A stretch of 64,000 nucleotides of DNA from assembly GCF_030144855.1 (NCBI RefSeq), contig NC_082706.1, positions 14,942,001 to 15,006,000 on the forward strand, written 5' to 3'. The notes below the pieces were generated by a model, which made no database searches, was not told the origin of the DNA, and saw only the letters and a list, made by a program, of their open reading frames with translations. The position numbers were made by a program, and so were the translations under genes. Source of the stretch: Hypanus sabinus (lineage: Eukaryota). Below are positions 7,937-58,602 of the stretch, one piece after another (positions within the stretch are counted from its first letter, which is position 1; the number at the start of each line of letters is the position of its first letter).

Positions 7937-8500
7937 CAGTGGATTCCAGTTAATTGGGACACATCGGGACCAGTACATTTTGGCCCAATTAAGCAGCTGG
8001 CCCAATCAGCCAAAGCTTCATGGAAATCATTAAAAAGGTATTAAAAAGACAAACTATCGTTTGATTGAGTAACAAAATATGTATTTAAATTAAATACAGA
8101 ACAAACAAGAACACTATAATACTATAAAACTATATTAGTTTTTAATAGTTATCGAAAGAGGAATTTACTCAGTGTACGCTGCTGTGTTCTTTTGATTAAC
8201 TGTAAATGAACAAAATCTGCAGACACCTAGTTCAGACAATGGACTGCTTCATGCAATCCTTCCGATGATTGTATCCTCCAAATCTTCATTTTCATTGTAA
8301 CATTCAAGATGATTGTCAACACCTTCAAGTTCTTCATAGTTCCTAACTTGTTGAAGTAATTAAAATATTTCATTTCACTCCCGACCGTTTTTGGCATTTT
8401 GCACCAAAACTGCAGTGAGCAAAACAGTTCTGAATTGGTTAACTGCTTATTTCTCAGCAGCTGTCAGCAACAAAAAACAGTATTAATCCACATCCTTAAC
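7937..8500. mobile_element. pogo/Tigger-like non-autonomous element (partial)
   Basis: Terminus CAGTGGATTCCAGTTAATTGGGACAC; inverse homology to 56712-57345. Confidence 0.6.
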
Positions 8501-9869
8501 AACGAGCCATATGAACATTTTTCAAACACAGATCTACAAAGGAGAATCCATCCAATGCCAGATTTCATCAGATGTCCCACCACAATAAAAATCTGGCTCA
8601 TGTTAAAAATGCCTCCACCAACTTCATGTGACCTCTGTTAAATATCCACTGTGAACACAGATATTTTCTTTCACTTTCATGTGGGCTTTGAGACTCTGCT
8701 AAAACTGATACAAAGAACTGGGGAGTGGAGGGGAGTGAAGCAGATTATTAATGAAGAGGTGCAGAGCAGCAGAGGCCGCAGGCTCAGATTACTATCACTG
8801 ACTTACATGACACATTTGTTGTCTTCCAGCACCAGTAAAATGCAAAGACATAAAATCATACCTTACAAAAAAAAATTGTGCAAATAAAAGGAATAACGAG
8901 GTAGTGTTCATACTTTCATTCAGAAATCTGAAGGCAGAGAGGAAGAGATTCTTGTTAAGTTATTGAATGTGGGTCTTCAAGACCCTGTACGTCAAAACCA
9001 ATGGCAGTAACAAGAGGGGGGTGTGTCTCAAGCAGTGAGGGTCCTTAGACTGGTGAACAGCATGCAGTACCAGGTGATATTTCAAATAATACTACAAAGG
9101 ATAATATTTGTCTTTGTTAGACGCTGAGAAATGCAGTACATTGTTTTTGATTCATTTTCATGCAATTATCATTTCTCAGTTTCCTAATACAATAGTCAGC
9201 ATTATGCCAAACACTCAACTGGCAGTCAAGTTAGCTATAGCAAAATGGAGACTTGACCCAAAACTGTACATTTCTCTCCACAGATGCTGCCTGGCCCATG
9301 AAGCTCCTCCAGAAATGCCCTTCTTGCTCCTGGAACACCTTGCCAAGCCAGATCATGAGAGGACCTTCACCAGGAGCACTGCAGCAATTCAAGACAGCTC
9401 ACCACCAGTTCCTCAAGAGCAACTAGGAATCGTTAGATTCTGCTGACCTCGCTGATGGCACGCAGGTCTCTCAAATGAATGATTATAAAATCCATCCCTG
9501 CTTTTCAAGCGAGGTTTTTAAATTATATTATTTATTTTAATAAATATCAAATTACATTGAAATAATATTCTTCTTGTAATTTTCAACTGTTCAAGATTTT
9601 TTAAATAATTATTTCCCCCTTTAGATAAATAATTTGCTTTTCTTTTCATTTAACCTTCTGTTGTAATCAACAATGCCAGGATAGATAGATACACACACTT
9701 CACTAGGTACACCTGTATACCCGCTCATTGATGCAAATATCCAATCAGCCAATCATCTGGCAGCAACTCAATGCATGAAAGCATGCAGACATGATCGAGG
9801 GGTTCAGTTGTCGTTCAGACCAAATATCAGAATGGGAGGGAAATTGTAAGGTATGTAAGGTATGATCGT

Positions 9870-18229: not shown

Positions 18230-18459
18230 CGGTTCCAGGACACACCGCCCTCACCTGAAGAGCATAATTCAATAGGAGGCGGTAATCTGGTTTTGATTGA
18301 CATTTGGATTAGCCTGTGACGACTTGCGCTCCGTTTAGGTCACAGACGCGGAAGACGTCATGACGTTATGGCGGCTCTGGGAAGTGGACAGCGGCTTTTT
18401 CTGTTCCCGTGTCCCCTGACAACAGGGCCTGGGTTGTGCCGGAGCTTTGCTGGGAAATG
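18230..18459 (+). promoter_or_regulatory. NUDT18: NUDT18 promoter and probable non-coding first exon
   Basis: CpG cluster with CGGAAG (ETS-like), GACGTCA/TGACGT (CRE-like) and ATGGCGGC (YY1-like); donor ATG|gtgagg at 18459/18460. Confidence 0.6.
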
Positions 18460-18493
18460 GTGAGGAATGAGGGAAAGAGAGTGGGGTGGGGGA

Positions 18494-19150
18494 GGGATGA
18501 AGGTGGAGGATGGGATGAGGGAGGGAAGAGGGATGAAGGTGGAGGATGGGATGAGGGAGGGAAGAGGGATGAAGGTGGAGGATGGGTTGGGGAGGGAAGA
18601 GGGATGAAGGTGGAGGATGGGATGGGGAGGGAAGAGGGATGAAGGTGGAGGATGGGTTGGGGGAGGGAAGAGGGATGAAGGTGGAGGATGGGATGAGGGA
18701 GGGAAGAGGGATGAAGGTGGAGGATGGGATGGGGTGGGAAGAGGGATGAAGGTGGAGGATGGGATGGAGAGGGAAGAGGGATGAGGGTGGAGGATGGGAT
18801 GGGGAGGGAAGAGGGATGAAGGTGGAAGATGGGATGGGGAGGGAAGAGGGATGAAGGTGGAGGATGGGATGGGGTGGGAAGAGGGATGAAGGTGGAGGAT
18901 GGGATGGAGAGGGAAGAGGGATGAGGGTGGAGGATGGGATGGGGAGGGAAGAGGGATGAAGGTGGAGGATGGGATGGGGAGGGAAGAGGGATGAAGGTGG
19001 AGGATGGGATGGGGAGGGAAGAGGGATGAAGGTGGAGGATGGGATGGGGAGGGAAGAGGGATGAAGGTGGAGGATGGGATGGGGAGGGAAGAGGGATGAA
19101 GGTGGAGGATGGGATGGGGAGGGAAGAGGGATGAAGGTGGAGGATGGGGT
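18494..19150 (+). repeat. G-rich minisatellite, 35-36-bp unit GGGATGAAGGTGGAGGATGGGATGGGGAGGGAAGA, about 19 copies
   Basis: Direct reading; no C on + strand from 18451 to 19162. Confidence 0.95.
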
Positions 19151-19726
19151 GAGGGTGGAGAACAGTGTGTAAAGGAGTGGGGATGAAGGAATGTGGAGGA
19201 CGGGTGTAGGAAGTTGGGGTGGAGAATGGAGTGTAAGAACGAAGGGGTGGGGATGGAGGAGAGAAGAGCTGTATGTCAATAAATACATAAATCATACACC
19301 TGTCATGGTAGATAAGCGAGAGTTTTTGAGAAGTCATAAAGTGAATCATACATAGAGCTATTACCCTGTATTAGGATTATAATACCTCAAAAGGCTGCTG
19401 TCAGATGCTTTATATTGTCAAGAGTACAGGGGCATAGCGGAAAACTTTGTTTTGTGTGCACTCCATACAGATCAGTTCATTACAATCGGAGTGCAGTGGA
19501 AAACAGTTACAGAATGCTGAGCAAAGTATTGTAGTTAGAAGGAAGTTACAGTCAGGAAATAAATTGCAAAGCCATGATGATGCAGACTGTGAGTTCAAGA
19601 GTCCATCTTATAATGGAGGCAGTTCAAAGTCTCCCAAGAGCAGGATAGAATTCTTTGAGCCTGACTGTATGTACTGTGGTATATGAAAGGTCTAGATAGT
19701 GTGGACATGGAAAGAATGTTTTCTGT

Positions 19727-26545: not shown

Positions 26546-27023
26546 GTCTTCAGCACATTCTCCAACCATCGAGTCTGCTCTACCATTTCATCATGGCTGA
26601 TCCATTCCCCTGACGGCCCCAAACTCCTGCCTTCTCCCTTCTGTTGGTCATCTTCTGCCCTCTGCTGGTCATTGACGCAGATGATGCATTTCATTGGATG
26701 TTTCAATGTATAGGTGACAAATAATGCTAAGGATTTTTATCTTTCTTTAATATGGTTAATACACTAGTATTTAGCAATGTTCTTTAAGTCTGTATGCGTG
26801 CATGTGAATATGTATATTCCCTTTGATTTGTTAAGCTTGCTGAGCTGTGTTTTTCCTGTGATTCAAGTCTGAAATTTAGTGGCTATTCTTGTATGTTGGA
26901 TCTGGGCAAGTCCAATCATACATTAATGACGGCAAAGGTGTAGTTTTTGTTAAAATTTATATGGACCACCTTTCTCCCAAATACTAAATTTACAGTCCTT
27001 GCAACTTCTATCCCAACATGCAG

Positions 27024-27237
27024 AAAGAAGTGGTGATGATGCAGGAGGCAAAACAAGAATGTTATGGCAAGTGGTACCTGCCAGCAGGGAGGATGGAACA
27101 AAATGAAACCATCACTGAGGCCGTGAAGAGAGAAGTTCAAGAAGAAACTGGTTTGGAGTGCGAGCCCTACACTCTGCTGAGCGTGGAGGAAAGAGGTCCA
27201 CGATGGATCCGGTTTGTTTTCCTGGCAAGAATTACAG
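27024..27237 (+). CDS. NUDT18: NUDT18 coding exon 2 (Nudix box)
   Basis: [38 protein letters not shown] fits GX5EX7REUXEEXGU; cag| acceptor, G|gtgcgc donor. Confidence 0.95.
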
Positions 27238-27654
27238 GTGCGCATTTCCCTTTTTGGTGAAGGTGGGAGTGATGGGAATTAAAGTGGCTGTCGCACTATG
27301 ATGAGCGAATACAAAGTAATGACTGCAGTCCTGAATTGTTTACTTTGGAATGTATACACTGGGTATATTTTGACGGGAATTTCTTTTTTTGTAAATTGGT
27401 ATTTTGTAACATATCAAACAATAATTTTAAGGTATATGTTGTTTATATGCTGATTCCTTTTTATGTTATAACTGGTGTCAACGGACTGTGTAATAAAGAA
27501 TCTGAATTATTCTTTCAAAAACTGAAGTATTATGGATTTGGCTTTTGAGATCTTAGTGTTGTGGACTTTCCTAAGTAAAAAATGAGGAATCAATGGCAAT
27601 GAAATGGTTCATTCAGTGGACAACATTTGTAAAAGTCATCTGTAACTCATTGTA

Positions 27655-28657: not shown

Positions 28658-29259
28658 GAGGGAACTTGAAGACTACATCAGAGAGTGATGCGGAATCCTT
28701 GCAGGCAAGATGGTGGGACAGAGTGTCACCACTTCCCCTGAGAGCCAGAGACATCTTAAATTTGATTTCATTTGCTGTCAAGCACAAAGAGAAAGCTTCT
28801 CATCCAGTGATTATGCCTGCTGAGTTGCCCTGCCCAGTTGTGTGTCACCGAGTAGTATCAGCCTTTCTCAACAAAAGCAATGAACTGTGGCTGCTGACTA
28901 ACAATCAGAGCCATCCCCATTTCCCCATCACTGTCTGTGGTTCCTCCTCAGCCGATCTATCCTGCAGCGTAGAAGTGGCCATCTACAGACTGATCAAGGA
29001 GTGCTTGAGGGATTCGCAGGTCAAGGTGAAAACTCATGGCATCTTGGGGTTGCAACACAGCGGTGGAATCACCGGGAAGACAGATGGTGTTTGTTTCAAT
29101 GTGCTGGTCACTGTCGCCCAGGTGGAAACTACATACAGCCAGTTCCCTCCAGATATTAACAGTGTGAAGTACACTTGGCACAAAGTGGACAATGATGATT
29201 TAAAAATTCAGTTGTTAGAGAGATTGTCATTTTCTTCTGTTGTGCCATTTTTGAATTAA
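28658..29259 (+). CDS. NUDT18: NUDT18 coding exon 3; whole protein 321 aa
   Basis: tttctag| phase 1; GGNLKTTSESDAESLQARWWDR, LPLRARDIL, GILGLQH, DGVCFNVLVT; TAA at 29259; AATAAA at 29280. Confidence 0.93.
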
Positions 29260-29318
29260 AGTGACAAGGGAAACATTAAAATAAAAGGAGGTTGAATCTT
29301 TTTATATTGATTGCCTGA

Positions 29319-37000: not shown

Positions 37001-40000
37001 TATTTAGGAGCTATGTTGAACTTCAGTTACATTGGTGTTGCTGTATAAAGATGAGAACTCATTTCCATTCCATTTCAACCCAGTGGTGAGAAGCCAGCCT
37101 TCATGAATGGGAATTGCTACCTTCTCTATGTGTCTTTTACTGGATGGGGAGTATTTCCAATGTTTTAGTAACCTGATGAGATTGCACCTGTGTTTCAGAA
37201 TATTGTTGAGCCAGAACTCTAGGCTGTCAGCTGGGTCTGCTACCATTGATCAGGACCATTTATGTCAGATTGTCATGTTGAAATGGCACTTCTGCTTGCT
37301 CAAAGCTCAAAGTACATTTTACTACCAAGGTATGTATATTTTATACAAGCTTGAGATTTGTCTCCTTAAAGGCAGCCACGAAACAATGAATCCCAATAGA
37401 ACCCATAAAAAACAAAAGGAGACTGTCAAACACCCAGTGTAAACAGAGAGAGGGGAGAAAAACAAATAGTGCAAACAATAAAAGCAAGCAAACAGCATTC
37501 AGAACTGAAGTTCATAACACCAGACATCACTGGAGTCAATCCAGAAGCCCATAAGTTGCAGGCCACAGACACAGTCCAGCACAGAGATGAGCAAACCCAG
37601 TGGAGCAGTGAGCTGAACTGGCCCATCTCTCACCTCCGACCCTGACACTCTGACAATTTCAATCTGGCCCAGTACTTAAATTGTCCAAATCTCAGGTTGT
37701 TCCTCACCCTCGGGCTCTGGCTCCACCACCTTGAGTCAGCCAGTACCCAATCTTCCCAATCTGGCTCAGCTCTTAATCAATCAGACATCCAATCTTTCTT
37801 CACCTCACCTCAGCTGCATCAAATTACCCTGTGAGGTTTGATGTGCTAGGAACCTGGTGCTCCATGTCTTTAGTTGGCTGAATACCACCGACAAGGATCC
37901 ACTAATGCTTGTTTGGTGGCAGGTAATTAGAGGGACTGGCTAGCTCTAGTGTTATGTGGAGCTGAGTGCTTAACATGTTGTTGGAGCCAAGGCTTTACCT
38001 CAAGGGCAGCATGGTACTGTAGCGGTTAGAGTATTGCCAGTGACACAGGTTCAATTCTGCCACTGTCTTTAAGGAGTTTGTACATTCTCCCCATGACCAT
38101 GTGGGTTTCCTCCCACAGTCCAAAGATGTACAGGTTAGTAAGTTGCTATGTTGGCACTGGAAGCATGGTGACAGTTGCGGGCAGCACTGAACACATCCTT
38201 GGACTGTGTTGGTTCACACAAATGACACAATTCATTGTATCGATGTTTTGATGTACATATGGCAACTAAAGCTAGTATTTCCTGTTCAAAAGCCCAAGGA
38301 TATCAAAAGTTCAGTACCTGTACATCGTAGGGGGCTTGTATTTGGAGATTTGGACCGGAACATTATAAACACATCGATATCACCCAAACTCTGATCCAAT
38401 GAGTCATGCCAATGGAAAAAGAGCTGAAGGTGATTAGATTTTATATTTACACATGCACAAAGTGCACATTCAACTGAAGAACTGGAGCATCGGATCAATG
38501 AAAACTCTGAAAGGGGTCATGTATCCAACAATAAACAGCCACAAATTATAGTGTGTATGGCTAAAAAGGCAATGTGCCTCATTCCACTCCAAAACACCAA
38601 AAAACAAGAATACTAGTTGACACCATAGTGTTCTGCTGAGCAAGTGTTTAAAGTTATCATCTTCAAGAGGCAATGTTAAACCCGGGGCCAGTCTGTCCTT
38701 CCAGATGGCACTGTTATTTTTAAGGGGACTTATTTCTATTATAGTCAGTTACTTGCATTGAGATAAGTATTCATGTTAAAAGATGACATATAAATGCAAA
38801 TTATGTGCTTAGAGTTTTAGGTACTAATAAGAACAACAGTTTGTTGGTATCATGTGCACGTTTTGTGATTGTTTTGCATGCAGTTTAAAAGTAAAATTTA
38901 AACGTTGTTAGTGATTTAGTTGTTTTAAGTGCTTTTAAAATATATCAGCTTATATTAGTTGAGTACAAAGTAAATTTTATTATCAGGGAACAAATACATC
39001 ACTACATACAACCTTGGGATTCATTTTCCTGCGGGCATACTCAGCAAATCGATAGAATGGTAACTCTGACAGGATCAATGAAAAAGATCATCTATAGTGC
39101 AGAAGGCAGCAAACCGCAAATGCAAATATAATTAAATAGTGAGAACATGAAATAACAAGATAAAAGAGTCCTTGCAGTGAGATCATTGGTTGTGGGAACA
39201 TCTCAATAGATGGGCAAATGCAGAGTTTACCCCTTTGTTCAAAGAGTGTAATGATTGAGGGGTAGTAACTGTTCTTGAACCAGGTGGTGTGAGTCCTGGG
39301 GCTCTTGTACCTTCTACCTGATGGCAGCAGCGAGAAAAGAGCACGGCCTTGGTGATGTGGATCTCTGATGATGTATGCTGCTTTCCTACAACAGTGTTTC
39401 AATACTTATTCTGCACGTGGTATATTCTCTTATATGACTAACATGACCTTTCTTTACCCTGTTATTCTATTCAATTCCCCTTTTCTTCTTTTCTCTCCAC
39501 CCCTAATCTTTTCACAAGGTTCTACTCCAATCTCCTCTCCTACCTACCCCTGTCCACCACCTTCTACAGTCCCCATCCCCTCTAACCCCTTCTCCCTCTT
39601 ATTTCCTCCACTTTACAACTCTTTTCTTTCCCCTGATACTTTCGTCCCTGTTTCTTTCGCAAGCGGCTACCCCATCAGCGGAAAATGTACACTTTTTAAC
39701 CTGAGAGATGGACATCTTCAATGAGTGATGCCTCAAGAAGTCAGCAACCTTCATTAAGAACCCCCATCACCCAGGATATTCTCATTGCTGCCATCATGAC
39801 GGCACACTCTCAACAATTCAGGAACAGCTTCTTCCCCTCTGCCATCTGATTTCTGAATGGACATTACAACCAATGAATACTACCTAACTACGTTTTTAAA
39901 ATTTATATTCCTGGAGATAGATGCATTTACTGTAATTCAGTTTTACCCGTTATTATGTATCGCATTGTACTGCTGCCGCAAAAACAACCAATTTCACGAT

Positions 40001-40079
40001 ATATGCAGGTGATATTAAACCTGAATCTAACTGTGAAAGCCTTTAATTTGCTCAATACCAGCGTACATCCCTCGGCCAA

Positions 40080-40397
40080 AGACCCTCACCGTCGCCATTT
40101 TGCGATGCCAATTTTAGTGCGGGCGCACATCGGGCCGGCGTGGGAGGATCCTCGTCAGTCCGCTTCTCCGATTAGCTGCGCTCCACATGATGGGCAGGGA
40201 ACTCTGGGTCTCCATTGGCCGGCGGGGCCATATATATGTGTGTGAATGTCCGATGAGGGACGGGCTGGCCGGAGGGTGGGTGTTTCCGGCCGACCCCCGA
40301 CGACGAATTTCCAGCCTTCTGATACCCCCACCCCCCCCAAAAAAAACCATCTTTCCCCCTCAGCCTGCCCCGGGTTCGGGTTTTGTTTCTCGCCGCC
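40080..40397 (+). promoter_or_regulatory. CpG-rich promoter/5' UTR of the Myb/SANT gene
   Basis: Dense CpG; YY1-like CGCCATTTT near 40093; ATTGG then TATATA near 40214-40237; GCCGCC before the ATG. Confidence 0.6.
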
Positions 40398-40628
40398 ATG
40401 TCGGAGCCTCGGACCCCGCGCTTCAGCGATAGAGCAGTGCAGGTTCTGCTGGAGCAGGTGAGGGCTCGCAGGGAGATATTTTTCCCCTCCGAGGGCAGGA
40501 GTGTGCCCAGGGAGAAGGTGCACCAGGCCTGGATGGAGGTGGCACACTGGGTTAATGCCAAGAGTGAGGTGCCAAAGACTTGGCTGCAGTGCCGCAAGAA
40601 GTTCAATGGCCTGACCTGGACTGCGAAG
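40398..40628 (+). CDS. Myb/SANT-like DNA-binding protein (MSANTD/NAIF1-type, Harbinger-derived), exon 1
   Basis: MSEPRTPRFSDRAVQVLLEQV...AWMEVAHWVNA...KTWLQCRKKFNGL; gccgccATG; donor AAG|gtaagc; phase 0. Confidence 0.88.
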
Positions 40629-42165
40629 GTAAGCATGGTGGCAGCAGGAGTTCACCCCCAGCCACTCTGCTCCAACCAGTCATCAGTCCTTGTGCTGGCA
40701 GGTTTCAGAATCAGGTTCATTATCACTGTCTCTCTCATGATGTGAAGTCTGTTCTGCGGCTGCAGGGCAGTTCAAAGTCATAACATCATTATACATTGCA
40801 AAATAATGCAACGGAAAGACTAATGAGGTCTGTTCTTGGGTTCATAGCTATCAGAGGGGGAAAGAACTGTTCCTGAATCATTGTCTGGCAGGCTTCTGTA
40901 CCTCCTGCCTAATGTTAGTAACAAAACATGGCACAGCTCACAATACAAGGACAACCCTTTGGATCAGAGATGAGAAGGAATTTCTTTAGCCAGAGGCTGG
41001 TGAATCTGTGGAATTCATTACCCCAGATGGCTGTGGAGGTCATGTCATTGAGTATATTTAAAGTGGAGGTTCTTGGTGTCAAAGGTTACAGAAAGAAGGC
41101 AGGAGAATGGAGTAGAGATAATAACAACTCAGACATGGTGGAGAAGATTCAATGGGCTGAATAACCTAATTCTGTTCTTGTGTCTTGTGGTCTTAAGAAA
41201 TCAGATAGCAGAGGGGAAGAAGCTGTTCCTGAATCATTGATGGTCTTCAGACTTCTGTATCTCCTCACCAATAAGAAGAGGGTACAATAAAACTGATTTC
41301 TCATGTATCATGATGAAGGCATGTGTTCACATCAGAAATGGCTGTGGTCCATATGCTTCCCCCTTACCCCCCCCCCAAACAACAGAAGTGTTCAGGCATA
41401 CTCCATTATTTTAGCCTGCCCTTAGCCCACTGAACTTGCTTCTTCCTGCAGGTCATGTCTGCGGCGGTGGGGGGGGGTTGGAAATGATCCCTGGAGGCAT
41501 GACAAGCAATCTGTTGGAGGAACTCGATGGGCTGAGCAGCATGTGTGGGAGAAAAGAAATTGTTGAAGCTTCAGGTCAAAAACCTGCATCAGGAGCAGGA
41601 ATTGCCAACGTTTCGGGCTGAAACTGGCTGCAGGGTGAGTTCGGATGCAGGGTTTCAAACAGGAATATCGACAGTTTCTTTACCTCATACTGACTGCTTG
41701 GCCAAGCAGAGTTCCACCAGTCGGTTGTTTATTGTTCCAGACATCGTCATCGGTCATCTCTGATGTCACTCGTCTGGAGGAAGGGCCCTTCCTTACAATC
41801 TGAAAAGCCACCGTTATGGTTATCAGAATCAGTTTTAATATTATTGCCTTTAGCCCATTCTGTAGAAATTTTCAAGTGTCTGTTGACATGTTAAATCTTC
41901 TCAGATCTGTATTTTGAATTCTCTGGCTAAATTTTGTGTCCACTCCATGATTTTTGCATTGGCTTTGCTTTCCTTGTAAGTCTGCTCTGAAGCAGCACAT
42001 TAAATGTAATCTGCTTTTGGATGGAATCAAAGTTACAGCACTTTAGGAGGTGATTCAGGCAAACATCTCTGCACTGATTTTCCACCAAAGCATTTCATTA
42101 GTTCCAGTCTAACCGATTCCTTTCCATTCTCTAGCCTTGCAAAATTTCATTGCTATATACACTCA

Positions 42166-43085
42166 GGCTACGTCCACACTAGACCGGATAAATCCGTACC
42201 CAAAGCTTTTTCTCTTCGTTTTGACCCTCTGTCCACACTGATATGGTGATCTCCTCCCCTAAAAATGGAGCTTTTCTAAAACGCCCTCCAGAGTGTGTAA
42301 ATTTGAAAATGGCAATTGGGCAAAGCAGTGTAGACGGGGTAACCGGAGAGTTTGTAAAACGCTGTCATGACGTGCCAGAACAGATAATGGCGGCAGCACA
42401 GCATTCCATTGTTTTCTTGAACACAACCCCCACACAAACAAACAATTTCAGAACAGATGGCAACGAGACTGAAGCCAGAGAAGTTAGAAATGTGATCACC
42501 AAATACTTTGACCATAACTTACTGAATAAATCTCACTTTGCCCTATTTTCTGTCCTTGCTTGTATGAAGGTGGTTTACCTATTTATGCAAGTACTTCTCT
42601 GACAATAGATGTGTAACAGCCTACTGTAATATTGTATGGAAATACAAGATAACACTCATGCAGACATGTTTTATACATTTAACAAGGTGCTTCGTTAATG
42701 CAACAGTTAGTCAGTTTTTCGATGTTCATCCTCAGCCGGGTCAATCTGTCTGTGAACTCCCTGTTGGTTGCTTCCATATGCTCCAGTATTTTTTTGTTTT
42801 AAGTCCTTCTGTGCGAGAGCCAACAGCTGTCCATCATTTGGCAACTTCCTTTTGAGTTTTTCTAGTCTAACTGCAAAAACGCGCACTTTCACAGCGAGAT
42901 TCGACACCAAACATGTCACTTGTTTTCTGTAGATGAGTCTTGCACATGCCCAGTAGGAGGAGATTCACCCAAATACCTGTTTTAATGTGGACAGAGGTAT
43001 TTTCAAAAACGCTTGGTGTGGATGCCTATCATTTTCACGTGAAACCAGCGCTTTCAAAATTATCCAGTCTAGAATGGACGTAGCC
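42166..43085. mobile_element. Non-autonomous PIF/Harbinger element, 3-bp TSD TCA
   Basis: TIRs GGCTACGTCCACACTAGACCGGATAA / TTATCCAGTCTAGAATGGACGTAGCC; TCA at 42163-65 and 43086-88. Confidence 0.82.
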
Positions 43086-43516
43086 TCAGTGGCCACTTCA
43101 TTAGATACAGGGGTGGAACCCGCTATGGTCTTTTGTTGCTGTAGTCCATCCACTTCAAGGTTCGACATGTTGTGCATTCAGAGATGCTTTTCTGCACAGA
43201 GATGCTCTTCTCTCGTGATTATTTGAGTCAGTTTGCTTCCTGTCACTTTGAACCAATCTGGCTATTCTCCTCTGACCTCTGGTTAACAAGATGCTTTCAC
43301 CCACAGAACTGCCGCTCACTGGATTTTTGTTTTTCTTTATTGCACCATTCTCTGTAAACGTTAGAGACTGTCGTGCATGAAAATCCCAGGGGGGCATCAA
43401 CAGTTTTAGATACTCAAACCTCTTCGTCTGATACCAACAATCATTCCACCATTAGTCACTTGGATCAGATTTACTCCCCATTCTGATGTTTGGCAGGAAC
43501 AGGAAATGAACCTCTC

Positions 43517-43956
43517 CTTCTGAGGTTTTATGGCGGTTGACAAACAGCTCTTATGGTGCATTACCACCACCTTCTGAACTGGAATATGGGTCAGGATATC
43601 TAAATGTTAAATGTATATATATCTATCAAATTCTATAAAAAAGACCTGTATTCTTAAGGAACTGTGCTATATATATTTAAAGCAATAATCCTGCGAACCT
43701 TTCTGCAAAATATTTTTAATGTTAAGTTGTGTTTTATAATGTGATAACTTTGAAATCAACCATCCTCTCCCTTGACTATATCTTGGGCACCTCACCAGAA
43801 TATGCTCAACTGTATCTTGTTGATTACAATACTCATTACTGTATTTCCTCATTAAGAACAATATTATTTAACCCTGTGTGCCCAAACCTCAATCTCACCA
43901 TCTCCCTCCTGCATTCCTTGACCATCCCACTTCCTTCCAGATATTATAGAGATAAC
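43517..43956 (-). mobile_element. I/Nimb-clade LINE 3' end
   Basis: CNQQDTVEHILVRCPRY CCHC-type motif; 3' end GGTGGTGGTAATGCACC...AAACCTCAGAAG; imperfect flanking duplication tgaacctct/tgaatctct. Confidence 0.6.
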
Positions 43957-46557
43957 TGAATCTCTTGACCATGTCTGCATGCTTTTATGCATTGAGTTGC
44001 TGCCACTTGATTTGCTGATTAGATATTTGCATTAATGAGCAGGTGTACCCAATAAAGTTGGCACTGAGTATATTTATTTAATTCCTTCCTTCCTTGAAGG
44101 CCAGAACAGAATCTCCTTCCACCACATCTGCAGACAGTACATTTCAGATTGCAGCCACATGCTGATTTTTTTAAGGTTTTCTTTGTGTCACTCTTAATTC
44201 TCTTTCCCTTAATGTTTCACCTGTGACCTTTAATCCTCAGCACTCTCCAGTGGGACCAGCTGCTTGCTATCCACTGTGCAAACCCCTCATCATGTTATAC
44301 ATTTCTGTCAGCCTTCTGTAAAGAAAAAGTTTTGACTTTTCAAATCTTCCAGCATCTTTGCTGGAGAAAAACATCCCAGGAAGGATATCAAACAAAGTCT
44401 TTCTGTGAACAGTAAGAGCAATTAAATCAGTTTACTATTAGATAGGGTTTAAGGAGCTTCTTAAGAGAGAAGTGAAAAAGCTAGACATGCTTGAAAGCAT
44501 AATCATGGTATTTTGACCTTGGTATGTGAATGTAATAGAGTAGATGTGGAGAAGGTGTTTCCTATGGTGGGAGTGTCTAGGACACAGCTTCAGAGTAGAG
44601 GGGTGTCCTTTTAAAGTGGAGATGAGGAAGAATTTCTTTAGCCAGACAGTGGTGGGTGAATCTGTGGAATTCATTGCCACAGGTGGCGGTGGGGGCCAAG
44701 CTTTTGGGTATATTTCAGACAGAGGTTGATAAATTCTTGATTAGTCAGGGCATGAAGAGTTATGGGGAGAAGGCTGGAGATTGGGGCTGAGAGGGAAAAT
44801 GGATCAGCCAATGATGAAATGGTGGAGCAGAATCAATGGACCAAATAGTCGCATTCTGCTCCTATGTCTTATGGTCTTGTGGTGAACCGGGTGGAGTGAT
44901 TAAATTCAGTAATTCTCAAGTAGTGGGCACCTTGGTGAGCATGGACAAGTAGGACTGAATGACGTCCCTCCCATCTGCATGACTCTTAAGAGGACAGTAT
45001 TAGACAAGTGCAGATAGTGTAGAGGTTGTAGCATGGGGAGTGGGGTGAAAACCATGAAGCGTATGAAAATAAAGATGAGAATTTTTAAACTGGGATTTTG
45101 CTAACCCAGCAGTCACTGTGAATCACTGTGCATAATGTGTAACTGGATCTCATGCAGCATGGGTTAAGGGTAAGATAAGGTGAGCTTTATTTGTCACACT
45201 ATATCAAAACACAGTGAAAGGCATCATTTTGCATCAACAATCAATGTCGTCCAAGGATTAAGCTGGGGGACACAAGTGTCCCCATGCTTCCAGTGCCAAC
45301 TCATTAACCCTATTATCAACCGTACCTGTTTGGAATATGGGGGGAGCCAGACCACCCAGAAGAAGCACACACGGTCACAGGGAGCATGTGCAAATGCCTT
45401 ACAGACAGCAGCAGGATTGAATCAGTGGTCCCTGGCACTACAAGGTGATGTGCTAACTGCTGCACTACTGTACTGCCCTGCCCTTTCAGAAGTTGGTGTG
45501 GAAGGGGTGGCACATCTATACAGGTAAAACTGTTGACTGATAATCTGTTGCAAAATGGGTTCATTCCTAATCTCTAGCGCTGTCTGTATGGAGCTTCCAT
45601 GTTCTCCTCTGATCGGTCTCCTGTGTGCTCTAGTTTGCTTCCAGATGGCCAGTGGTTTACTAATTGGTTATATTATTCCTAATGTAGGTAGGTGTATGGG
45701 ATAATTAGGAGTTATTGAGCAGAGCTGGTGGGTGTGTGAGAGAGTTGCAAGGAAATGTGGGGGAATGGGGTTGATGGGACTGCACTGGCAGCCAGCAGAG
45801 GGTAATGGGCCAAATTGTTTCAATGTTGCAAAGAAGTATGGAAAATGCTGGAAACACTCGGCAAGTCGGAGCTTGTGTGGAATGGGTAACAGAGAAAGGT
45901 ACAAATCTAAACCTGAGATTCTGCAGATGATGACAATCTAGAGCAACACTTACAAAATGCTGGAGGAACTCAGTAAATCAAGCAGCATCTATTGATGAGG
46001 AACAAACAGTCGCCATTTCGGGTGAGACCCATTATGAGGACTGGAAAGGAAGGAGACAGGCCAGAATAAGGTGGGGGGAGGGGAAGGAGTACAAGCTGGC
46101 AGGTGCTAGGTGAGATCATCTGAGGGGGGGGGCTGAAGTAAGGAGCAAAATGGTGATAGGGAGAAGAGGTAAAGGGCTGAAGAATGAATCTGATAGGAGA
46201 GAAGGGTGGATCATGGGAGAAGGAGAAAGGGCACCAGAGGGCATGTGAAAAAAAAAGGAGAGTCAGAACAGGGAATGGACAAGGAGAGAAGGGGGGTGGA
46301 AATTACTGAAAGTTAGAGAAATCAATCTTCATGCCATCAGGTTGGAGGCTATCCATATGGAATCTGAGGTGATGCACCACCAACCTGAGTATGGACTGAT
46401 CGTGGCACTCGAGGAGGTCATGAACAGACATATTGAAATGGGTGGCCACCTGGAGACCCTTCCTTTTGTGGTGGACAGAGAAGATGCTCAAAAGACAGTC
46501 TTTTGATTATCATCAGGTCTCACCAATGTAGAGGAAGCAACACTAGATACAGTAGAC

Positions 46558-47625
46558 CAGTGATGCTCAATGTAGGCCATAAGGTCTCCTGGGGGCTATG
46601 CCAGGTTTTGTCGTGGCCAAGTTTAAAAAAAAAACAAGAAGCTGGGAGCCACAGAAGTTTCTGAATAGGCCATGATAAGTTTACAGTTTTAATGAAATAT
46701 TACTAAAATATATACATAAAAAAGAAATGAGTATATGTAATTGGATGAAATGGATGGTAAGATGTGCTAGATGCTGCAAATGAGGCATTAAAATAGCTTA
46801 GTTGTGTTTGGGGGTTGGTGGCGTATCAATCTCTCTCCTGCTTGACCACGCACAAATCACAATTCACAGCCTGCAGGGCGGCCTGCTGAGCCCTGTTGCA
46901 CATCCACAAACTGCAGATCTGCTCTGTGCCCCAGTGAGTGAGTGAGTATATAATAAGAGGCCAGTTCTGTTTGCCTTCCACTGACCTGTGCATGTTATAT
47001 TACTTACAAAACATGACATGAAGGCTGCAGTTACTGCAGTGGGTCATCTGCCAGAAATGGTTAAACTGCAGAGAGGTGAGACTTCAAACATTCTACCACT
47101 GCATCACTAGTGACCACTACAACTATTAAATCCCTGTTACTTGTTATTTTGAAAGGAAGTTCAAATCACTCTTCTTGGTTAGTGCATGCTCCTTATTGCT
47201 ACATAGGACTTGAATATATAATATAATTTTTTTAAAAGCCCAATAAATAAATTATTTTTAAAAAGTATTACTTTAAAAGCTGGTTTTATTTTTACATGTA
47301 TATTCAATACTGATACTTTTTCACGTGGGATTACACTTATAATAATTCTTTGACTTTTACTAGTTTTCTATAGAGCCTACTCACACGAAACTACCTAGTT
47401 TGGTGTCATGGTTGTTGCTGCTATGTGTCAGTGGTCGCATAACCAGGACTTGTGATGTGCACCAGCTGCCCATACGACCATCCACCACCTGCTCCCATGG
47501 CTTCACGTGACCCTGATCGAGGATCTAAGCAGATGCTACACCTTGCCCGAGGGTGACCTGCAGGCTAATGGAGGGAAGGAGTGCTCATGCCTCCTCTGGT
47601 AGAGACATATCTCCACTCTGGCTAG

Positions 47626-47692
<67 letters not shown>

Positions 47693-48321
47693 TATATGTG
47701 AATGATGTCACTACATTGAAAGAATGTCTTATTGAGCTGCAGAGTGATAAAACAGCTCAAGCAAAATTGAAACACAGCAAGCAACATTTTTGAATATCTA
47801 CTGTTTCCACAGCTTTGCGAGAAAGCTAAGTTTTTAATTGGATTTCCCACCTCTCATCTAGTTGAGTGTGGTTTTAGTTAAGCTCTTCAACTGCTTTCAA
47901 AAGCTTGTAACCGTCTTGATGTTGTGAAAAGAAGTGATCTTTGATTACCTCTAACCAAGTTCCAGCCAGATATTCATAAACTCACTAGTTTTCATCTGTG
48001 TCAAGGATCTTACTAAATACCCAAAGTAACAATATTAAGTGCTTTTTCATTGCTGGTTATAGTTTCATTATATATTATAAATAAACTATCGTATTTAGAA
48101 CTTTGAAATAGTTTTATTTATCATACACACCACCAACATTATATTTAACATATAATAATACCGATAACCTGTTAAGACATAAATATTAACTGTATATTGG
48201 AATAAATAGTATAGTTGACAAAAAATGCCTTAGCAACTAATGGAGACATTGGAGGGTGGGGGCCTCCAGAGGTAAATGATAGTCTCAAGTGGGCCATGAG
48301 CAGAAAAGCTGAGAAGCACTG
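46558..48321 (+). mobile_element. hAT/Charlie-type element remnant with 8-bp TSD
   Basis: CAGTAGAC at 46550-57 and 48322-29; TIRs CAGTGATGCTCA / TGAGAAGCACTG; dimerisation-domain remnant FPTSHLVECGFS...NRLDVVKRSDL...PDIHKL at about 47800-48016. Confidence 0.85.
47628..47694. repeat. (TA)n(CA)n compound microsatellite
   Basis: Direct reading. Confidence 0.95.
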
Positions 48322-48858
48322 CAGTAGACGACCCTGACAGATTCGCAGGTGAAGTGTTGCCTCACCTGGAAGGACTGTTTGGAACCTTGAGTTGTGGTGA
48401 GGAAGGAGGTGTAGGGATCAAGGTAGTTTGGTTGATCTCAAATTTATAAACTGTCAGCAAGGTAGCTATTTACACAGGTAAGCCTAAAGGTGAGGACGCT
48501 TGAAGGAAAGCCCTCAGAATTAGATGTGAGCAGTGATTAAAATCTTGAAAACTTTTCACATCTCCTCACGTAGAAGAAAAGTAATATAGTCACTCATATT
48601 TTTGTGGAGGCATATGTTTTATGCAAGTTGGCCACACCATTTCCTACATTACAGCAGTGACTCTACTTCAGAAATAATGCTAAGGGCAGTAAATAAATTG
48701 AAGCCCTTTGTTTTCTACGCAAAACCAATAAACATGGCTGTTAACTGGCTACATCCCCTGCCCCCTGCATTCAGCTGGTTCGCACGTCTCTGTGATGCGT
48801 TAGCATGTAACATTGCATTAACAATGAAGCATGTGACTCACTCTCACTTTTTCTGCAG

Positions 48859-49018
48859 GAGAAGTTGGCCCACAAAACAAGGAAAAGAACCAGTTGCGGG
48901 GAACGGCCCGCATCCATTCTAGATCTCACCCAGATGGAGCAGGAAGCCCTGGACATCATTGGGCCCAACAGCAGGAGAAACCTTGAGAATGGCAAGGCTG
49001 GAGGCCAAGTACCACAGG
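48859..49018 (+). CDS. Myb/SANT-like gene, exon 2 (EKLAHKTRKRTSCGERPASILDLTQMEQEALDIIG...)
   Basis: Acceptor ctttttctgcag, phase 0; donor G|gtgcat, phase 1; typical post-SANT LTxxExxALxIIG segment. Confidence 0.85.
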
Positions 49019-49148
49019 GTGCATTCCTATTTCTCTTTCCTGCTCTTTTCAGTCATCACACTGACCGAGTAATCACTGTAGAGAAGTTCATGTGCTGTTC
49101 TTACTTCACCATCCTAGGACTCACCAATCTTGTCTCCCTCTTTTTCAG

Positions 49149-49993
49149 ATCTGACTCATTACCTAGGCTTTATCGGACAGGAGATGGAGGAGGAGCATTT
49201 CACAGAAGATGCACAGTCACCAGCCCCATCTTTCCACTACATCAGCACTGACCTAAACATCTCCAGTGGAATGGACGATCAGCTAAATGGATCTTCACAT
49301 AATGAATTATTCAGTAGTAATGAACAGGAGCTGAACATAGTGGAAAGGACCGTCCAGGAGACCGATGACTCCAGGGCAACCTCTGGTCCTAGCTGTATCG
49401 AAGAGGACAAAGATGCAGATCTCACAGGCCCAGCTTTTAGAAGAAAGATTTTCCACGAGCATCATCAGTTGCTCCAAGCTTTGGACAAACTGCCAAAGAG
49501 CTGCCTCACGCTGTCTGAGAGTGTAGAAGAGTCTGCATCCATTTTTTGTGGGGTTGTGGCTCAAGGTATTACCACCCTGCAGTCTACCATGGAGCGCGTT
49601 GCCAACTCTGTCGATGCAGCCATGAAGCCCTCTGTCCATGAGCCTGTGGCACCTACTTTGGCGTCATTGATTGAGGCTCAAACTAGTGCTATTCAGGCTC
49701 TGGCATGCACCATTTCCACTAGTTTGGAAAGGTTGGGTGGGCGTATTGATAGGGGGTTCGGTCACATCTCAGACCTTCTGCAGTCTGCTCTGCCACAACT
49801 CAATGGCGGCATTGAGTCACAGCCCCACATGAGTGGGCCTGCTGGAGTGTCTCTTGCTAGCCTCTCTCGGGGTAACAGCACGTATGATCCTTCACCATCT
49901 TCTGAAGCCCCATCTCCTCCAGAAGCACCACTGAATCTGCAGGTGGCGGTCAGATCCCCTCGAGGTCGAGCACTTCGAGGCAGGCGTCCTTGA
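49149..49993 (+). CDS. Myb/SANT-like gene, exon 3 (acidic linker, helical/coiled region, basic tail); whole protein 411 aa
   Basis: Acceptor ctctttttcag in phase 1 with ORF 49130-49993; AATAAA near 50138. Confidence 0.85.
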
Positions 49994-50509
49994 GCATCCT
50001 TCAGACACTGACTGGGTTACACTAACTGCCAGTTCACTGAACTGAAGCCACGAGGGATTCACAACTAGAATAGCAAACGATGACTTCATAAAGGTACTAC
50101 AAGATGGTATCTGGAAGACTGCTGCTAATCGCATAAGCAATAAAATATTACTTTGTTTGCAAATCTAATTGATGGTTTGTAACCATGCTGCTGTAATGTC
50201 AACTGTTGGGGACATCTGTGTTAGTCAGTGGTTGGAGGTATCGCTGGATGACTGAAGACTTGAACATGGGCACGAGCTAAGTAGACTACTATTCAGGTAT
50301 GAAAGACCAGGAAATGTGGTACACAGTAGCTTTTTTAAAAATAAATCTGTTTAACTTTCAGGCAAAACTTTTATCAGAAGTTGGCACAAAGAGAAGTAAA
50401 AGGAATAGGCCATTCTGGCCTTTTGAAACTGTTCCACCATTCAACATGATCAGTCCCTGAAGCAAGAGTTCCCAAAATTTTTTATGCCTTGGACCCCTTG
50501 CTATATTGG

Positions 50510-57345: not shown

Positions 57346-58602
57346 TATTTCCATCTTAATGTTTGCAAGTTGTGTCAATATTTGAGTGATACCAGTGTTC
57401 TTTATGGAGATTATTATATTGTGTCATTCACCTGATAAAGAACATGGGTTTTATATCTTTGTACAACTATAGGGATCTACATATACTGTATCTATTGGGA
57501 ATAATACTGTATTATTCAACTCTAAATTAAACTTTCATTTCACTGTACACTTTGAAGGTAGAAACTATCTAATCTGAGCATTGGAGTTGTGTTTGATTTA
57601 TGTTGGGATAATCTTTCATCTGAGAAAGGGTAAATTTTATGATGCTATTTAATTCTTACATAATCGCAGTGCCAACAGCACATAGAGGATCAGACTTGTA
57701 AGTCAACCAAGAACTTGGTTTAAAAATAAGACCTGTGAAAGAGATTAACTTCAAGCTTGGGAGATCGCCGATAGTGATAACATTGACATTGCTCTTCTTT
57801 CAGGTTTATGGATTGAAATCTATTGGTGATAATTCGTTGGATATTGAGTGATTTTTCACTAGTGTTTACATCGTGACAAAAAGTAACCAACATACAGGAG
57901 AAAAAGGTCATGTGGATAGATAAGTGACAAAAGGAGTTTTAATCCAAAGTATTGTGAGGTATTGTTTTTGGGAATTATAACAAGGGAAAGGAATACACAA
58001 AATACAAGAGGATATTGGAATGTTTGAAGTAACACATATCTTGGTATATACACAGATCCTTAAAATTAGCAGGCCAAGTCAGTGAGGTAGTACAGAATGC
58101 AAGGAACCTTTCTTTTTATTAGCTGGGGCACAATATTAGAACAAGAAAGAAGAAATCCAGTTTAAAAAAGTAAGATTAATAAGCTAGCTTTGTTTCTGTG
58201 AAATAGAGTTCAATGTGAATAGAGAATCAGATGAGGCAGATAAAACTCTAAGGGGTTAGAGAAAATAAAACAGTACAGCAGAGCACTGGAATAATCCCCT
58301 TGGCCCACAATGGTGTACTAAACTAGTAAGTAAATTACATCTGCATCCCACCATTTTCTGCATATTTATGTGCCTACCTAAAAGCCTCTAAAGTGCCTTT
58401 ATCATGTTTGCTTCCAAGACCACCCTGGCTGTGCATTCCTACCATCCACCACTCTGTGTTTCAAAAACAAAACTTGCCCTGAATACCTCCTGTGATCTTA
58501 GCCACTCTCCCCCCAAATGTGTGCCCTATAGTATTAGATATTTTGAGCCTGGGAATAAGATATATTTGTTTATCAATGCTCTTATAAACTAGAACAAATA
58601 TA

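What the first reader, a model, noticed from the sequence alone, without database searches (positions are those of the whole stretch)
40080..50160. Intact three-exon Myb/SANT gene that looks like a domesticated Harbinger DNA-binding gene without a transposase
Seen: exons 40398-40628, 48859-49018 and 49149-49993 join in phase into an uninterrupted 411-aa ORF. It has a gccgccATG start, a CpG-rich promoter and an AATAAA, while its 8.2-kb intron 1 has accumulated CR1, Tc1, Harbinger, Nimb-like, Penelope and hAT insertions, several nested. I saw no flanking TIRs or DDE transposase ORF. Known: Harbinger elements encode a transposase plus a Myb/SANT protein, and vertebrate NAIF1/MSANTD genes derive from the latter. 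Inference: an ORF that stayed intact while the intron decayed is under selection, so this may be a lineage-specific host gene. The basic tail SPRGRALRGRRP could be an NLS or AT-hook-like motif.
Basis: partly seen in the sequence, partly recalled or inferred. Interest (0 to 1): 0.82.

Follow-up and report, generated by a model that had tools for sequence, protein, structure and literature searches.

The report
Domesticated Harbinger Myb gene in rays
This stingray gene is real and conserved: it descends from the DNA-binding helper gene of a Harbinger "jumping gene", belongs to a small family found so far only in sharks, skates and rays, and adds one more case to a known pattern of vertebrate gene birth.

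Summary
The three exons (40398-40628, 48859-49018, 49149-49993, + strand) join through GT-AG introns into a 411-aa ORF. It has an N-terminal Myb_DNA-bind_5 domain. It differs by 4 residues from an "uncharacterized protein" of the stingray Hemitrygon akajei.

Orthologues with the same 231+160+~850-nt exon plan occur in a skate, beside the same NUDIX neighbour, and in many sharks. dN/dS is 0.19-0.27 overall and 0.07-0.13 in the Myb and C-terminal helical domains.

The gene is not an orphan. It is paralogue "A" of at least three old paralogues (A, B, C). A and B both predate the shark/ray split.

The Harbinger origin is now directly supported. In the shark Heptranchias perlo, a ~4.2-kb element has 15-nt inverted ends, 3-bp ATA flanks and a DDE_Tnp_4 transposase. 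It carries a Myb-like gene homologous to the window protein over 370 aa (E 1e-38), with introns at the same positions (240+160+998 nt).

The window has no transposase and no such inverted ends. All full-length relatives whose source I looked up are elasmobranch. NAIF1, MYPOP and MSANTD4 are only 13-17% identical.

In sharks, gene conversion homogenises the promoter and exon 3 of A and B but spares the Myb exon.

Verdict: a new member of a known kind, of moderate interest.

The parts
39750..40397 (+). CpG-island-like promoter and 5' leader of the gene
   Evidence: GC 0.46-0.58 and CpG observed/expected 0.83-0.85. An inverted CCAAT box (ATTGG, 40214-40218) is shared with the A and B promoters of other species.
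40089..40147 (+). Promoter block conserved with the skate orthologue
   Evidence: 88% identity over 59 nt to L001 9735-9793. It contains the GCCATTTT..GCGGGCGCAC motif shared by A and B promoters.
40398..40628 (+). Exon 1 (231 nt, codons 1-77): most of the Myb/SANT trihelix
   Evidence: ATG in a GCCGCC context, donor GTAAGC. Myb_DNA-bind_5 at E 3.6e-12. 90% nt identity to skate. pLDDT above 90.
40455..40463 (+). Internal donor CAG|GTGAGG (junction 40457|40458), which would give a Myb-less 354-aa isoform
   Evidence: Annotated isoforms P0004 (Pristiophorus A) and P0018 (H. akajei B) use the same junction, joining Q20 to exon 2.
40629..48858 (+). Intron 1 (8230 nt), repeat-rich
   Evidence: 36% of it has other copies in the window. 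The same intron is 3.5 kb in skate and 2.5 kb in Heptranchias.
45012..45169 (+). Unique block in intron 1 conserved with the skate intron 1 (candidate regulatory element)
   Evidence: 72.8% over 162 nt to L001 11933-12090, collinear. It is not among the segments repeated in the window.
48859..49018 (+). Exon 2 (160 nt): end of the Myb domain plus the conserved helix around TQMEQEALDII
   Evidence: Acceptor CAG, donor GTGCAT. Exon 2 is exactly 160 nt in all seven orthologues and paralogues and in the transposon copy.
49019..49148 (+). Intron 2 (130 nt)
   Evidence: GT..AG. Short in all relatives (116-149 nt in most).
49149..49993 (+). Exon 3 (845 nt including the stop): acidic disordered linker, helical hairpin, Pro-rich tail
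   Evidence: No Pfam family. AlphaFold2 model.
49430..49789 (+). Coding for residues 225-344: two long helices (225-288, 298-344), the family-specific C-terminal domain
   Evidence: pLDDT about 80. dN/dS 0.07-0.13. 60 of the 131 invariant columns of alignment A2 lie at residues 224-346. Homologous to the same region of the transposon protein P0035.
49952..49990 (+). Basic C-terminal motif RSPRGRALRGRRP
   Evidence: Aligned with R-x-P-R-A-R-A-L-R-D-R-R-P in the A, B and C paralogues, and with KPRGRPPK in the transposon-borne P0035.
49994..50451 (+). 3' UTR, with AATAAA at 50139 and 50340
   Evidence: The alignment to skate runs on to 50451 (76% over 48740-50451). Signals.

Best explanation
The locus is an intact, expressed-type host gene. 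It is paralogue 'A' of an elasmobranch gene family that arose by domestication of the Myb-like (ORF2) gene of a PIF/Harbinger DNA transposon.

The ancestral transposon gene already had three exons and the full architecture: a Myb/SANT trihelix, a short helix, an acidic linker, a two-helix hairpin and a basic tail. One copy lost its transposase and inverted ends and gained a CpG/CCAAT-box promoter. It duplicated into A and B, and probably C, before sharks and rays diverged. It has since been kept under purifying selection next to a NUDIX gene.

Inferred mechanism:
- The protein is nuclear. It binds specific DNA through the trihelix, as Harbinger Myb-like proteins and NAIF1 do.
- It self-associates or binds partners through the conserved helical hairpin.
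- It uses the acidic linker as an effector or interaction region, and the basic tail for nuclear import or minor-groove contact.
- An internal donor in exon 1 can give a Myb-less isoform that would keep the hairpin but not bind DNA.

Shown here: gene structure, domain, conservation, selection, paralogy, and the link to the transposon. Inferred only: DNA binding, dimerisation, nuclear location and regulatory role.
For: - ORF and splice sites. Myb_DNA-bind_5 at E 3.6e-12.
- Orthologues and paralogues in 15+ elasmobranch species, all with the same exon plan of 231+160+~850 nt.
- The skate orthologue has a NUDIX gene upstream. That gene's last exon aligns to window 28930-29287, and window 27018-27257 is NUDIX at E 1.7e-15.
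- NG86 dN/dS is 0.19-0.27 overall, 0.08-0.13 for Myb, 0.07-0.13 for the hairpin and 0.36-0.79 for the tail. Bootstrap 95% upper bounds are 0.31 or less.
- The tree of residues 1-130 gives clades A (SH-aLRT 100), B (91) and C (90). A and B each hold sharks and batoids. C's only batoid is one long-branch skate sequence.
- Transposon link, locus L009 in Heptranchias. The Myb-like gene P0035 (+ strand, exons 240+160+998 nt) converges on a DDE_Tnp_4 transposase (Pfam E 7e-17 and 2e-12, a single in-frame TGA). Both lie inside 15-nt inverted ends (14/15 match) with ATA on both flanks.
- P0001 against P0035 gives BLASTP E 1e-38, 29% identity over 370 aa, including the hairpin.
- A second, decayed copy of the Myb-like gene lies in L004. 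An unrelated genome shows the same convergent pairing of Myb-like gene and transposase (L008).
- AlphaFold2 gives the trihelix pLDDT above 90 and the hairpin about 80.
- The best Swiss-Prot fold matches are NAIF1, MYPOP, MSANTD4, MSANTD3 and TSNARE1. These are the genes listed as Harbinger Myb-like derivatives or candidates in PMC9392472.
Against: - No transcript evidence could be examined. Expression rests on database gene models only.
- The direction transposon-to-host is inferred from the general rule that Harbingers carry a Myb-like ORF2. The trees are midpoint-rooted.
- The TIR/TSD call in L009 rests on one 15-nt pair and a 3-bp match. ATA is not the classic TWA.
- Absence from chimaeras and bony vertebrates is absence of hits in protein databases, not a genome search.
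- I looked up sources for only 30 of the 150 listed HMMER hits.
- No DNA-binding, dimerisation or localisation data exist. PDB fold matches are weak (best E 0.47) and there is no PDB sequence match.
Confidence: 0.8

Rival explanations
1. The gene is simply the elasmobranch orthologue, or an in-paralogue set, of a named pan-vertebrate Harbinger-derived gene such as MYPOP or NAIF1. It has diverged fast, so there was no separate domestication.
For: NCBI names some family members 'MYPOP-like', and names one distant member (P0173) 'NAIF1'. Foldseek aligns NAIF1 and MYPOP models over nearly the full length at E about 1e-6. The overall plan of Myb domain, acidic region, helices and Pro-rich tail resembles MYPOP (from my own knowledge).
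Against: Identity to NAIF1, MYPOP and MSANTD4 is only 13-17%, whereas the shark transposon ORF2 is 29% identical at E 1e-38 with identical intron positions. Every close or full-length relative whose source I looked up is elasmobranch. For P0173, the protein-atlas NAIF1 cluster ranks only 23rd. I could not build a joint phylogeny, because no NAIF1 or MYPOP sequences were available through the tools.
Confidence: 0.1
2. The ORF is still part of a mobile or recently mobile element, such as a non-autonomous Harbinger carrying only ORF2. On this reading its intactness reflects youth, not host selection.
For: Sharks hold many dispersed relatives, including compact solo copies such as P0027 with no adjacent transposase. 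Chimeric gene models also carry the C-terminal domain.
Against: Exon structure and the NUDIX neighbour are shared between stingray and skate. Orthologues exist across sharks, with dS of 0.4-1.1 but dN/dS about 0.2. There are no inverted ends and no transposase in the window. The 8.2-kb intron is incompatible with the 116-375-nt introns of the transposon-type copies.
Confidence: 0.02
3. The host family came first, and the shark Harbinger element captured a host gene copy. The homology would then run host-to-transposon.
For: The trees are unrooted or midpoint-rooted. The C-terminal hairpin was found only in elasmobranch proteins, and the Myb-like protein of the unrelated element in L008 is short (208 aa) and matched the family profile only in its Myb region. 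The hairpin could therefore be a host invention.
Against: A Myb-like ORF2 convergent with the transposase is the canonical Harbinger layout (PMC9392472, PMC9179366), and it recurs in L008. In the N-terminal tree the transposon-borne protein P0035 (E) pairs with the solo copy P0027 (D) outside the A/B/C clade. Recurrent domestication of this ORF is documented in vertebrates.
Confidence: 0.06

Closest known systems
Myb-like ORF2 protein of PIF/Harbinger transposons (here: P0035 in the Heptranchias perlo element, L009 7743-11945)
   Same: Full-length homology (E 1e-38). The same three-exon plan with identical intron positions and a 160-nt exon 2. The same order of trihelix, DLSGPAFKR-like motif, helical region and basic tail.
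   Different: The window gene has no partner transposase, TIRs or TSD. It has an 8.2-kb first intron and a CpG/CCAAT promoter that the element lacks. It sits at a fixed syntenic position and is under purifying selection. Its tail has lost the canonical R-G-R-P core.
NAIF1 (vertebrate gene derived from a Harbinger Myb-like gene; partner of HARBI1)
   Same: Best reviewed fold match (E 1.2e-6). Same Pfam domain. Same evolutionary route of Myb-like ORF2 domestication (PMC9392472).
   Different: 13% identity. NAIF1 is present across jawed vertebrates, whereas this family was found only in elasmobranchs. No evidence here of a HARBI1-type partner.
MYPOP / p42POP
   Same: An N-terminal Myb_DNA-bind_5-type domain followed by helical and Pro-rich regions. 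Foldseek E 1.7e-6. NCBI names some family members 'MYPOP-like'. Listed as a putative Harbinger derivative in PMC9392472.
   Different: 16-17% identity. No orthology signal. MYPOP is pan-vertebrate.
MSANTD1-4 family
   Same: Recurrent, independent domestications of Harbinger Myb-like genes under negative selection (PMC9392472). MSANTD4 and MSANTD3 are among the fold matches.
   Different: Those events date to the base of jawed vertebrates or of sarcopterygians. This one is restricted to elasmobranchs and still has a near-intact relative of its source transposon in a shark genome.

Membership tests
Domesticated Harbinger Myb-like (ORF2-derived) host genes | Myb/SANT-like trihelix domain of the Harbinger ORF2 type | tested here: met
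   Pfam Myb_DNA-bind_5 at E 3.6e-12, residues 5-82, 46.5 bits against a cut-off of 21.7. F9 and W45 are invariant across all 33 family sequences (A3). W62 and F69 are invariant within A and B (A2).
Domesticated Harbinger Myb-like (ORF2-derived) host genes | Demonstrable homology to a Myb-like gene carried inside a bona fide Harbinger element | tested here: met
   The L009 element has a DDE_Tnp_4 transposase, 15-nt inverted ends and 3-bp flanks. P0001 against its ORF2 gives E 1e-38. Intron positions are identical.
Domesticated Harbinger Myb-like (ORF2-derived) host genes | Immobilised: no TIRs or transposase, and an orthologous position in several species | tested here: met
   No transposase or TIR in the window. 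The same NUDIX neighbour and collinear conserved blocks in skate. Synteny in sharks could not be tested with 10-kb flanks.
Domesticated Harbinger Myb-like (ORF2-derived) host genes | Long-term purifying selection on the coding sequence | tested here: met
   dN/dS 0.19-0.27 with dS 0.43-1.1. Bootstrap upper bounds of 0.31 or less.
Domesticated Harbinger Myb-like (ORF2-derived) host genes | Transcribed and spliced as a host mRNA | not testable with these tools
   No RNA-seq access. The only support is NCBI gene models, including isoforms.
Autonomous or non-autonomous Harbinger transposon | Terminal inverted repeats with a 3-bp TSD around the unit | tested here: not met
   No inverted pair brackets 40080-50160. 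There are 0 matches to the shark element's end at up to 2 mismatches.
Autonomous or non-autonomous Harbinger transposon | DDE_Tnp_4 transposase ORF next to the Myb-like gene | tested here: not met
   tblastn of both halves of the shark transposase against the 64-kb window gave no hit at E<=0.01.
NAIF1 / MYPOP / MSANTD4 orthogroups | Orthologue-level sequence similarity and a distribution across jawed vertebrates | tested here: not met
   13-17% identity to the reviewed members. Every full-length relative whose source I looked up is elasmobranch. A joint phylogeny was not possible.
AT-hook proteins | Core R-G-R-P flanked by basic residues | tested here: not met
   The window tail is PRGRALRGRRP and the orthologues have PRARALRDRRP, with no G-R-P. 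The aligned position in the transposon protein P0035 reads KPRGRPPK, which is canonical.

The most novel reading that the evidence does not exclude
The A and B paralogues may work as a pair. They would heterodimerise through a C-terminal hairpin that gene conversion keeps identical, while selection keeps their Myb exons different. They would act on the still-living cognate Harbinger lineage of elasmobranchs, for example by occupying its subterminal binding sites or by sequestering its transposase. That would make them a host-encoded regulator or repressor of the transposon family they came from, with the Myb-less isoform as a built-in dominant negative.
Probability: 0.1. Interest if true: 0.7.

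Novelty: new member of a known kind. Interest (0 to 1): 0.45.

Why it matters
Domestication of Harbinger Myb-like genes is known to have produced NAIF1 and MSANTD1-4, and probably MYPOP and TSNARE1, near the base of jawed vertebrates. In those cases the source transposons are long gone or only distantly similar.

Here, a related transposon lineage survives in a shark alongside the conserved host genes. It is nearly intact, with a single stop codon in its transposase, and it shares full-length homology and intron positions with them.

That pairing allows a before-and-after comparison that older cases do not. One can see what was kept (exon plan, trihelix, hairpin), what was gained (CpG/CCAAT promoter, long intron) and what decayed (the AT-hook core).

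The mosaic concerted evolution of A and B, in which the promoter and exon 3 are homogenised and the Myb exon is spared, is a clean natural example of selection resisting gene conversion at a DNA-binding domain.

It remains an incremental addition to a known class. The proteins are already in databases as 'uncharacterized'.

Tried and rejected
- Pfam on the C-terminal 280 aa found no family. The only matches were at noise level.
- PDB sequence search with the family profile gave 0 hits at E<=1. PDB Foldseek gave only weak Myb/trihelix matches (Sap1, Zeste, GT-1; E>=0.47) and nothing for the hairpin.
- The protein atlas returned only generic Myb_DNA-bind_5 clusters.
- Ten intron-1 ORFs gave no TE domain.
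- Paralogue B was sought in the window by tblastn and is not within these 64 kb.
- The H2B-like histone gene downstream in skate has no counterpart in the window.
- I suspected a transposase remnant next to the decayed copy in L004 from a remembered N-terminal motif. Pfam and tblastn did not support it, so I make no claim.
- P0028 and P0030, at about 680 aa, were suspected of being fusions with a transposase. They contain no DDE domain.
- DNA for the H. akajei reference locus, for Mustelus and for the C paralogue could not be fetched.
- Synteny with NUDIX in sharks could not be tested, because the 10-kb flanks share only exons and repeats with the window.
- A search for promoter similarity between the host genes and the transposon's 5' end found nothing convincing.

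Full report
OBSERVATION

They concatenate to 1236 nt and translate without interruption to 411 aa plus a stop. Exon 2 ends in phase 1 and exon 3 completes the codon.
- Donors are GTAAGC and GTGCAT. Both acceptors are pyrimidine-rich tracts ending in CAG.
- The start codon sits in GCCGCCATGT.
- The 750 nt around it have CpG observed/expected of 0.83-0.85, against 0.1-0.3 nearby.
- AATAAA occurs 146 and 347 nt after the stop.
- Pfam places Myb_DNA-bind_5 at residues 5-82 (E 3.6e-12). The C-terminal 280 aa match no family.
- About 36% of intron 1 is repeated elsewhere in the window. The ten longest intron ORFs gave no significant Pfam family, only two noise-level matches to unrelated domains. A shark Harbinger transposase finds nothing in the window.

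IDENTITY AND CONSERVATION

The protein differs at 4 of 411 positions from an 'uncharacterized protein isoform X1' of the stingray Hemitrygon akajei. Full-length relatives of 57-84% identity exist in skates, rays, sawfish and many sharks.

I rebuilt the coding sequences of six relatives from their genomic loci. All have the same plan: a 231-nt exon 1, a 160-nt exon 2 and an exon 3 of 821-887 nt. Intron 1 ranges from 2.3 to 21 kb.

The skate (Amblyraja) orthologue has a NUDIX gene ending 9.7 kb upstream. That gene's last exon aligns at 86.6% to window 28930-29287, and window 27018-27257 is a NUDIX exon (E 1.7e-15).

Outside the exons, stingray and skate share only four collinear blocks:
- a 59-nt promoter block;
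- a 160-nt block in intron 1;
- the 3' UTR;
- a non-coding block 7.4 kb downstream.

Stingray and sharks share only the exons, apart from dispersed repeats.

SELECTION

Nei-Gojobori dN/dS between the window gene and its skate, Heptranchias and whale-shark orthologues is 0.19, 0.23 and 0.20, at dS 0.43-1.11. Bootstrap 95% intervals top out at 0.31.

| Region | dN/dS |
|---|---|
| Myb domain | 0.08-0.13 |
| Residues 223-346 | 0.07-0.13 |
| Acidic linker | 0.19-0.42 |
| Tail (residues 347-411) | 0.36-0.79 |

In the tail, only the terminal basic motif is conserved.

A FAMILY, NOT AN ORPHAN

The N-terminal 130 residues give three clades:
- A, which includes the window gene (SH-aLRT 100);
- B (91);
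- C (90).

A and B each contain both sharks and batoids, so that duplication predates the shark/ray split. C's only batoid is one long-branch skate sequence.

In Heptranchias, A and B lie about 41 kb apart, head to head. In the whale shark they lie about 112 kb apart, tail to tail. B is not within this window.

A profile search of 1.84 billion representatives found 295 hits. Every hit that extends into the C-terminal domain, and whose source I looked up, is elasmobranch. So are nine of the ten best Myb-only hits that I looked up; the tenth is an unnamed record. Word-based searches gave only elasmobranch proteins.

MOSAIC CONCERTED EVOLUTION

For residues 271-411, A and B group by species in sharks: Heptranchias 99, Pristiophorus 99, Heterodontus 96. 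In batoids they stay apart.

Heptranchias A compared with B:

| Segment | Nucleotide identity | dS |
|---|---|---|
| Promoter | 94.5% | - |
| Exon 1 | 72% | 1.28 (Myb region, codons 1-90) |
| Exon 2 | 82% | - |
| Exon 3 plus 3' flank | 94.5% | 0-0.09 |

Paralogue-specific residues at the start of the hairpin persist across species: FHEHH, LP[RK]S and VVAQ in A against FHVHH, LSRS and VLPQ in B. Conversion therefore homogenises most of the unit, while selection keeps the DNA-binding exon and part of helix 1 distinct.

THE TRANSPOSON LINK

P0035 is one of the more distant full-length relatives (profile E 6e-43). It lies in Heptranchias locus L009.
- Its gene (8001-9838, + strand) has exons of 240, 160 and 998 nt. 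The intron positions and phases match the window gene.
- About 300 nt beyond its stop, on the opposite strand, lie two adjacent ORFs (11572-10151). They match Pfam DDE_Tnp_4 positions 1-87 and 99-158 (E 7e-17 and 2e-12). A single in-frame TGA separates them, where the transposase reading frame is otherwise continuous.
- Both genes are enclosed by a 15-nt inverted pair, GGGCTGGATTTTAGC / GGGCTCGATTTTAGC, at 7743 and 11945. ATA lies on both outer flanks.

This is the two-gene layout of PIF/Harbinger elements (PMC9392472, PMC9179366).

BLASTP of the stingray protein against P0035 gives E 1e-38, 29% identity over 370 aa. The match runs through the trihelix, the D-x-x-GP-x-x-KR motif and the helical region.

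Other copies:
- A decayed second copy of the P0035-type Myb-like gene (72% nt over 2.2 kb) lies 5 kb downstream of paralogue B in Heptranchias.
- A closer solo copy (P0027, 40% identical) has the same compact exon plan but no transposase nearby.
- An unrelated genome (L008) shows the same convergent pairing of Myb-like gene and transposase.

The window has neither the transposase nor the inverted ends.

STRUCTURE AND LIKELY MECHANISM

AlphaFold2 with a 33-sequence alignment gives:
- a confident trihelix (helices 11-23, 38-55, 62-88; pLDDT above 90);
- a conserved short helix at 102-111;
- a disordered acidic stretch at 118-219;
- two long helices at 225-288 and 298-344 (pLDDT about 80);
- a disordered tail.

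The best reviewed fold matches are NAIF1, MYPOP, MSANTD4, MSANTD3, FSBP and TSNARE1, at 13-17% identity. PDB gives only weak Myb/trihelix matches.

By analogy with Harbinger Myb-like proteins, which bind transposon ends and import and recruit the transposase, and with NAIF1 (PMC9392472), I infer the following. None of these functional steps is shown here.
- The protein is nuclear and binds specific DNA.
- Its helical hairpin mediates self- or partner association.
- The basic tail aligns with a canonical AT-hook core (KPRGRPPK) in the transposon protein. In A, B and C it has degenerated to R-A-R-A-L-R-D-R-R-P, so nuclear import or weak minor-groove contact is the more likely role.
- An internal donor (CAG|GTGAGG, 40457|40458) matches the junction used in annotated Myb-less isoforms of both paralogues in other species. 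Such an isoform could act as a dominant negative.

COMPARISON AND NOVELTY

The gene meets the tested criteria for a domesticated Harbinger Myb-like gene. It fails those for a transposon and for orthology with NAIF1, MYPOP or MSANTD4.

PMC9392472 describes five such vertebrate genes and four further candidates, none of them elasmobranch-specific. PMC9179366 found no Harbinger in the elephant shark. I found no paper describing this family.

It is therefore a new member of a known kind. What is unusual is that a near-intact related transposon survives in a shark, and that the paralogues show mosaic conversion.

LIMITS
- No transcript data.
- No whole-genome copy count in the stingray.
- No joint phylogeny with named vertebrate genes or Repbase ORF2s.
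- Trees are midpoint-rooted.
- The TIR/TSD call rests on one element.

Noticed in passing
The exon at 27018-27257 is NUDIX at E 1.7e-15. The last exon is 86.6% identical to skate.
   Followed up: partly
window 45012-45169: A unique 160-nt block inside intron 1 is conserved with intron 1 of the skate orthologue (72.8%). The rest of the intron does not align. It is a candidate intronic regulatory element.
   Followed up: partly
window 57346-57856: An AT-rich non-coding block is conserved and collinear with the skate region downstream of the gene (66% over 575 nt). It has stops in all frames.
   Followed up: partly
window 40170-40218 and alignment A4: Promoters of the A and B paralogues across sharks and rays share a GCCATTTT..GCGGGCGCAC block and two inverted CCAAT boxes. 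In the window these are ATTGG at 40214-40218 and a degenerate GATTAG at 40170-40175. The transposon copy lacks them.
   Followed up: partly
L009 7743-11945 (Heptranchias perlo CM068670.1): A near-intact ~4.2-kb Harbinger element. It has 15-nt inverted ends, ATA flanks, a three-exon Myb-like gene, and a convergent DDE_Tnp_4 transposase interrupted by a single in-frame TGA.
   Followed up: yes
L004 21011-23202 (Heptranchias perlo): A decayed copy of the same element's Myb-like gene lies 5 kb downstream of paralogue B. No transposase is detectable beside it.
   Followed up: partly
L002 4147-9538 and L004 8110-9373: A long satellite of about 48-bp period lies just upstream of both the A and B genes in Heptranchias. 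It sits within the 94.5%-identical (converted) promoter region.
   Followed up: no
P0042 and P0052 (shark gene models): The family's C-terminal helical domain also appears in gene models with a SAMD1 winged-helix N-terminus or a KH-domain N-terminus. These could be exonised copies or model fusions.
   Followed up: no
window 39810-39857, 40857-40883, 41193-41240: Copies of one dispersed repeat in opposite orientations flank exon 1 (48-nt arms, 92% complementary). They are interspersed repeats, not ends of the gene unit.
   Followed up: partly
window 18335-19349 (-): Two overlapping ORFs of more than 300 aa are made of Pro/Ser-rich repeats. This is a tandem repeat, probably within a NUDIX-gene intron.
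   Followed up: no
P0040 cluster (P0172-P0181): A 425-aa distant family member is kept at 90% identity or more across at least eight shark species, and is labelled NAIF1 in one of them. It is 29% identical to the window protein over the full length. Whether it is the true NAIF1 orthologue is unresolved.
   Followed up: partly
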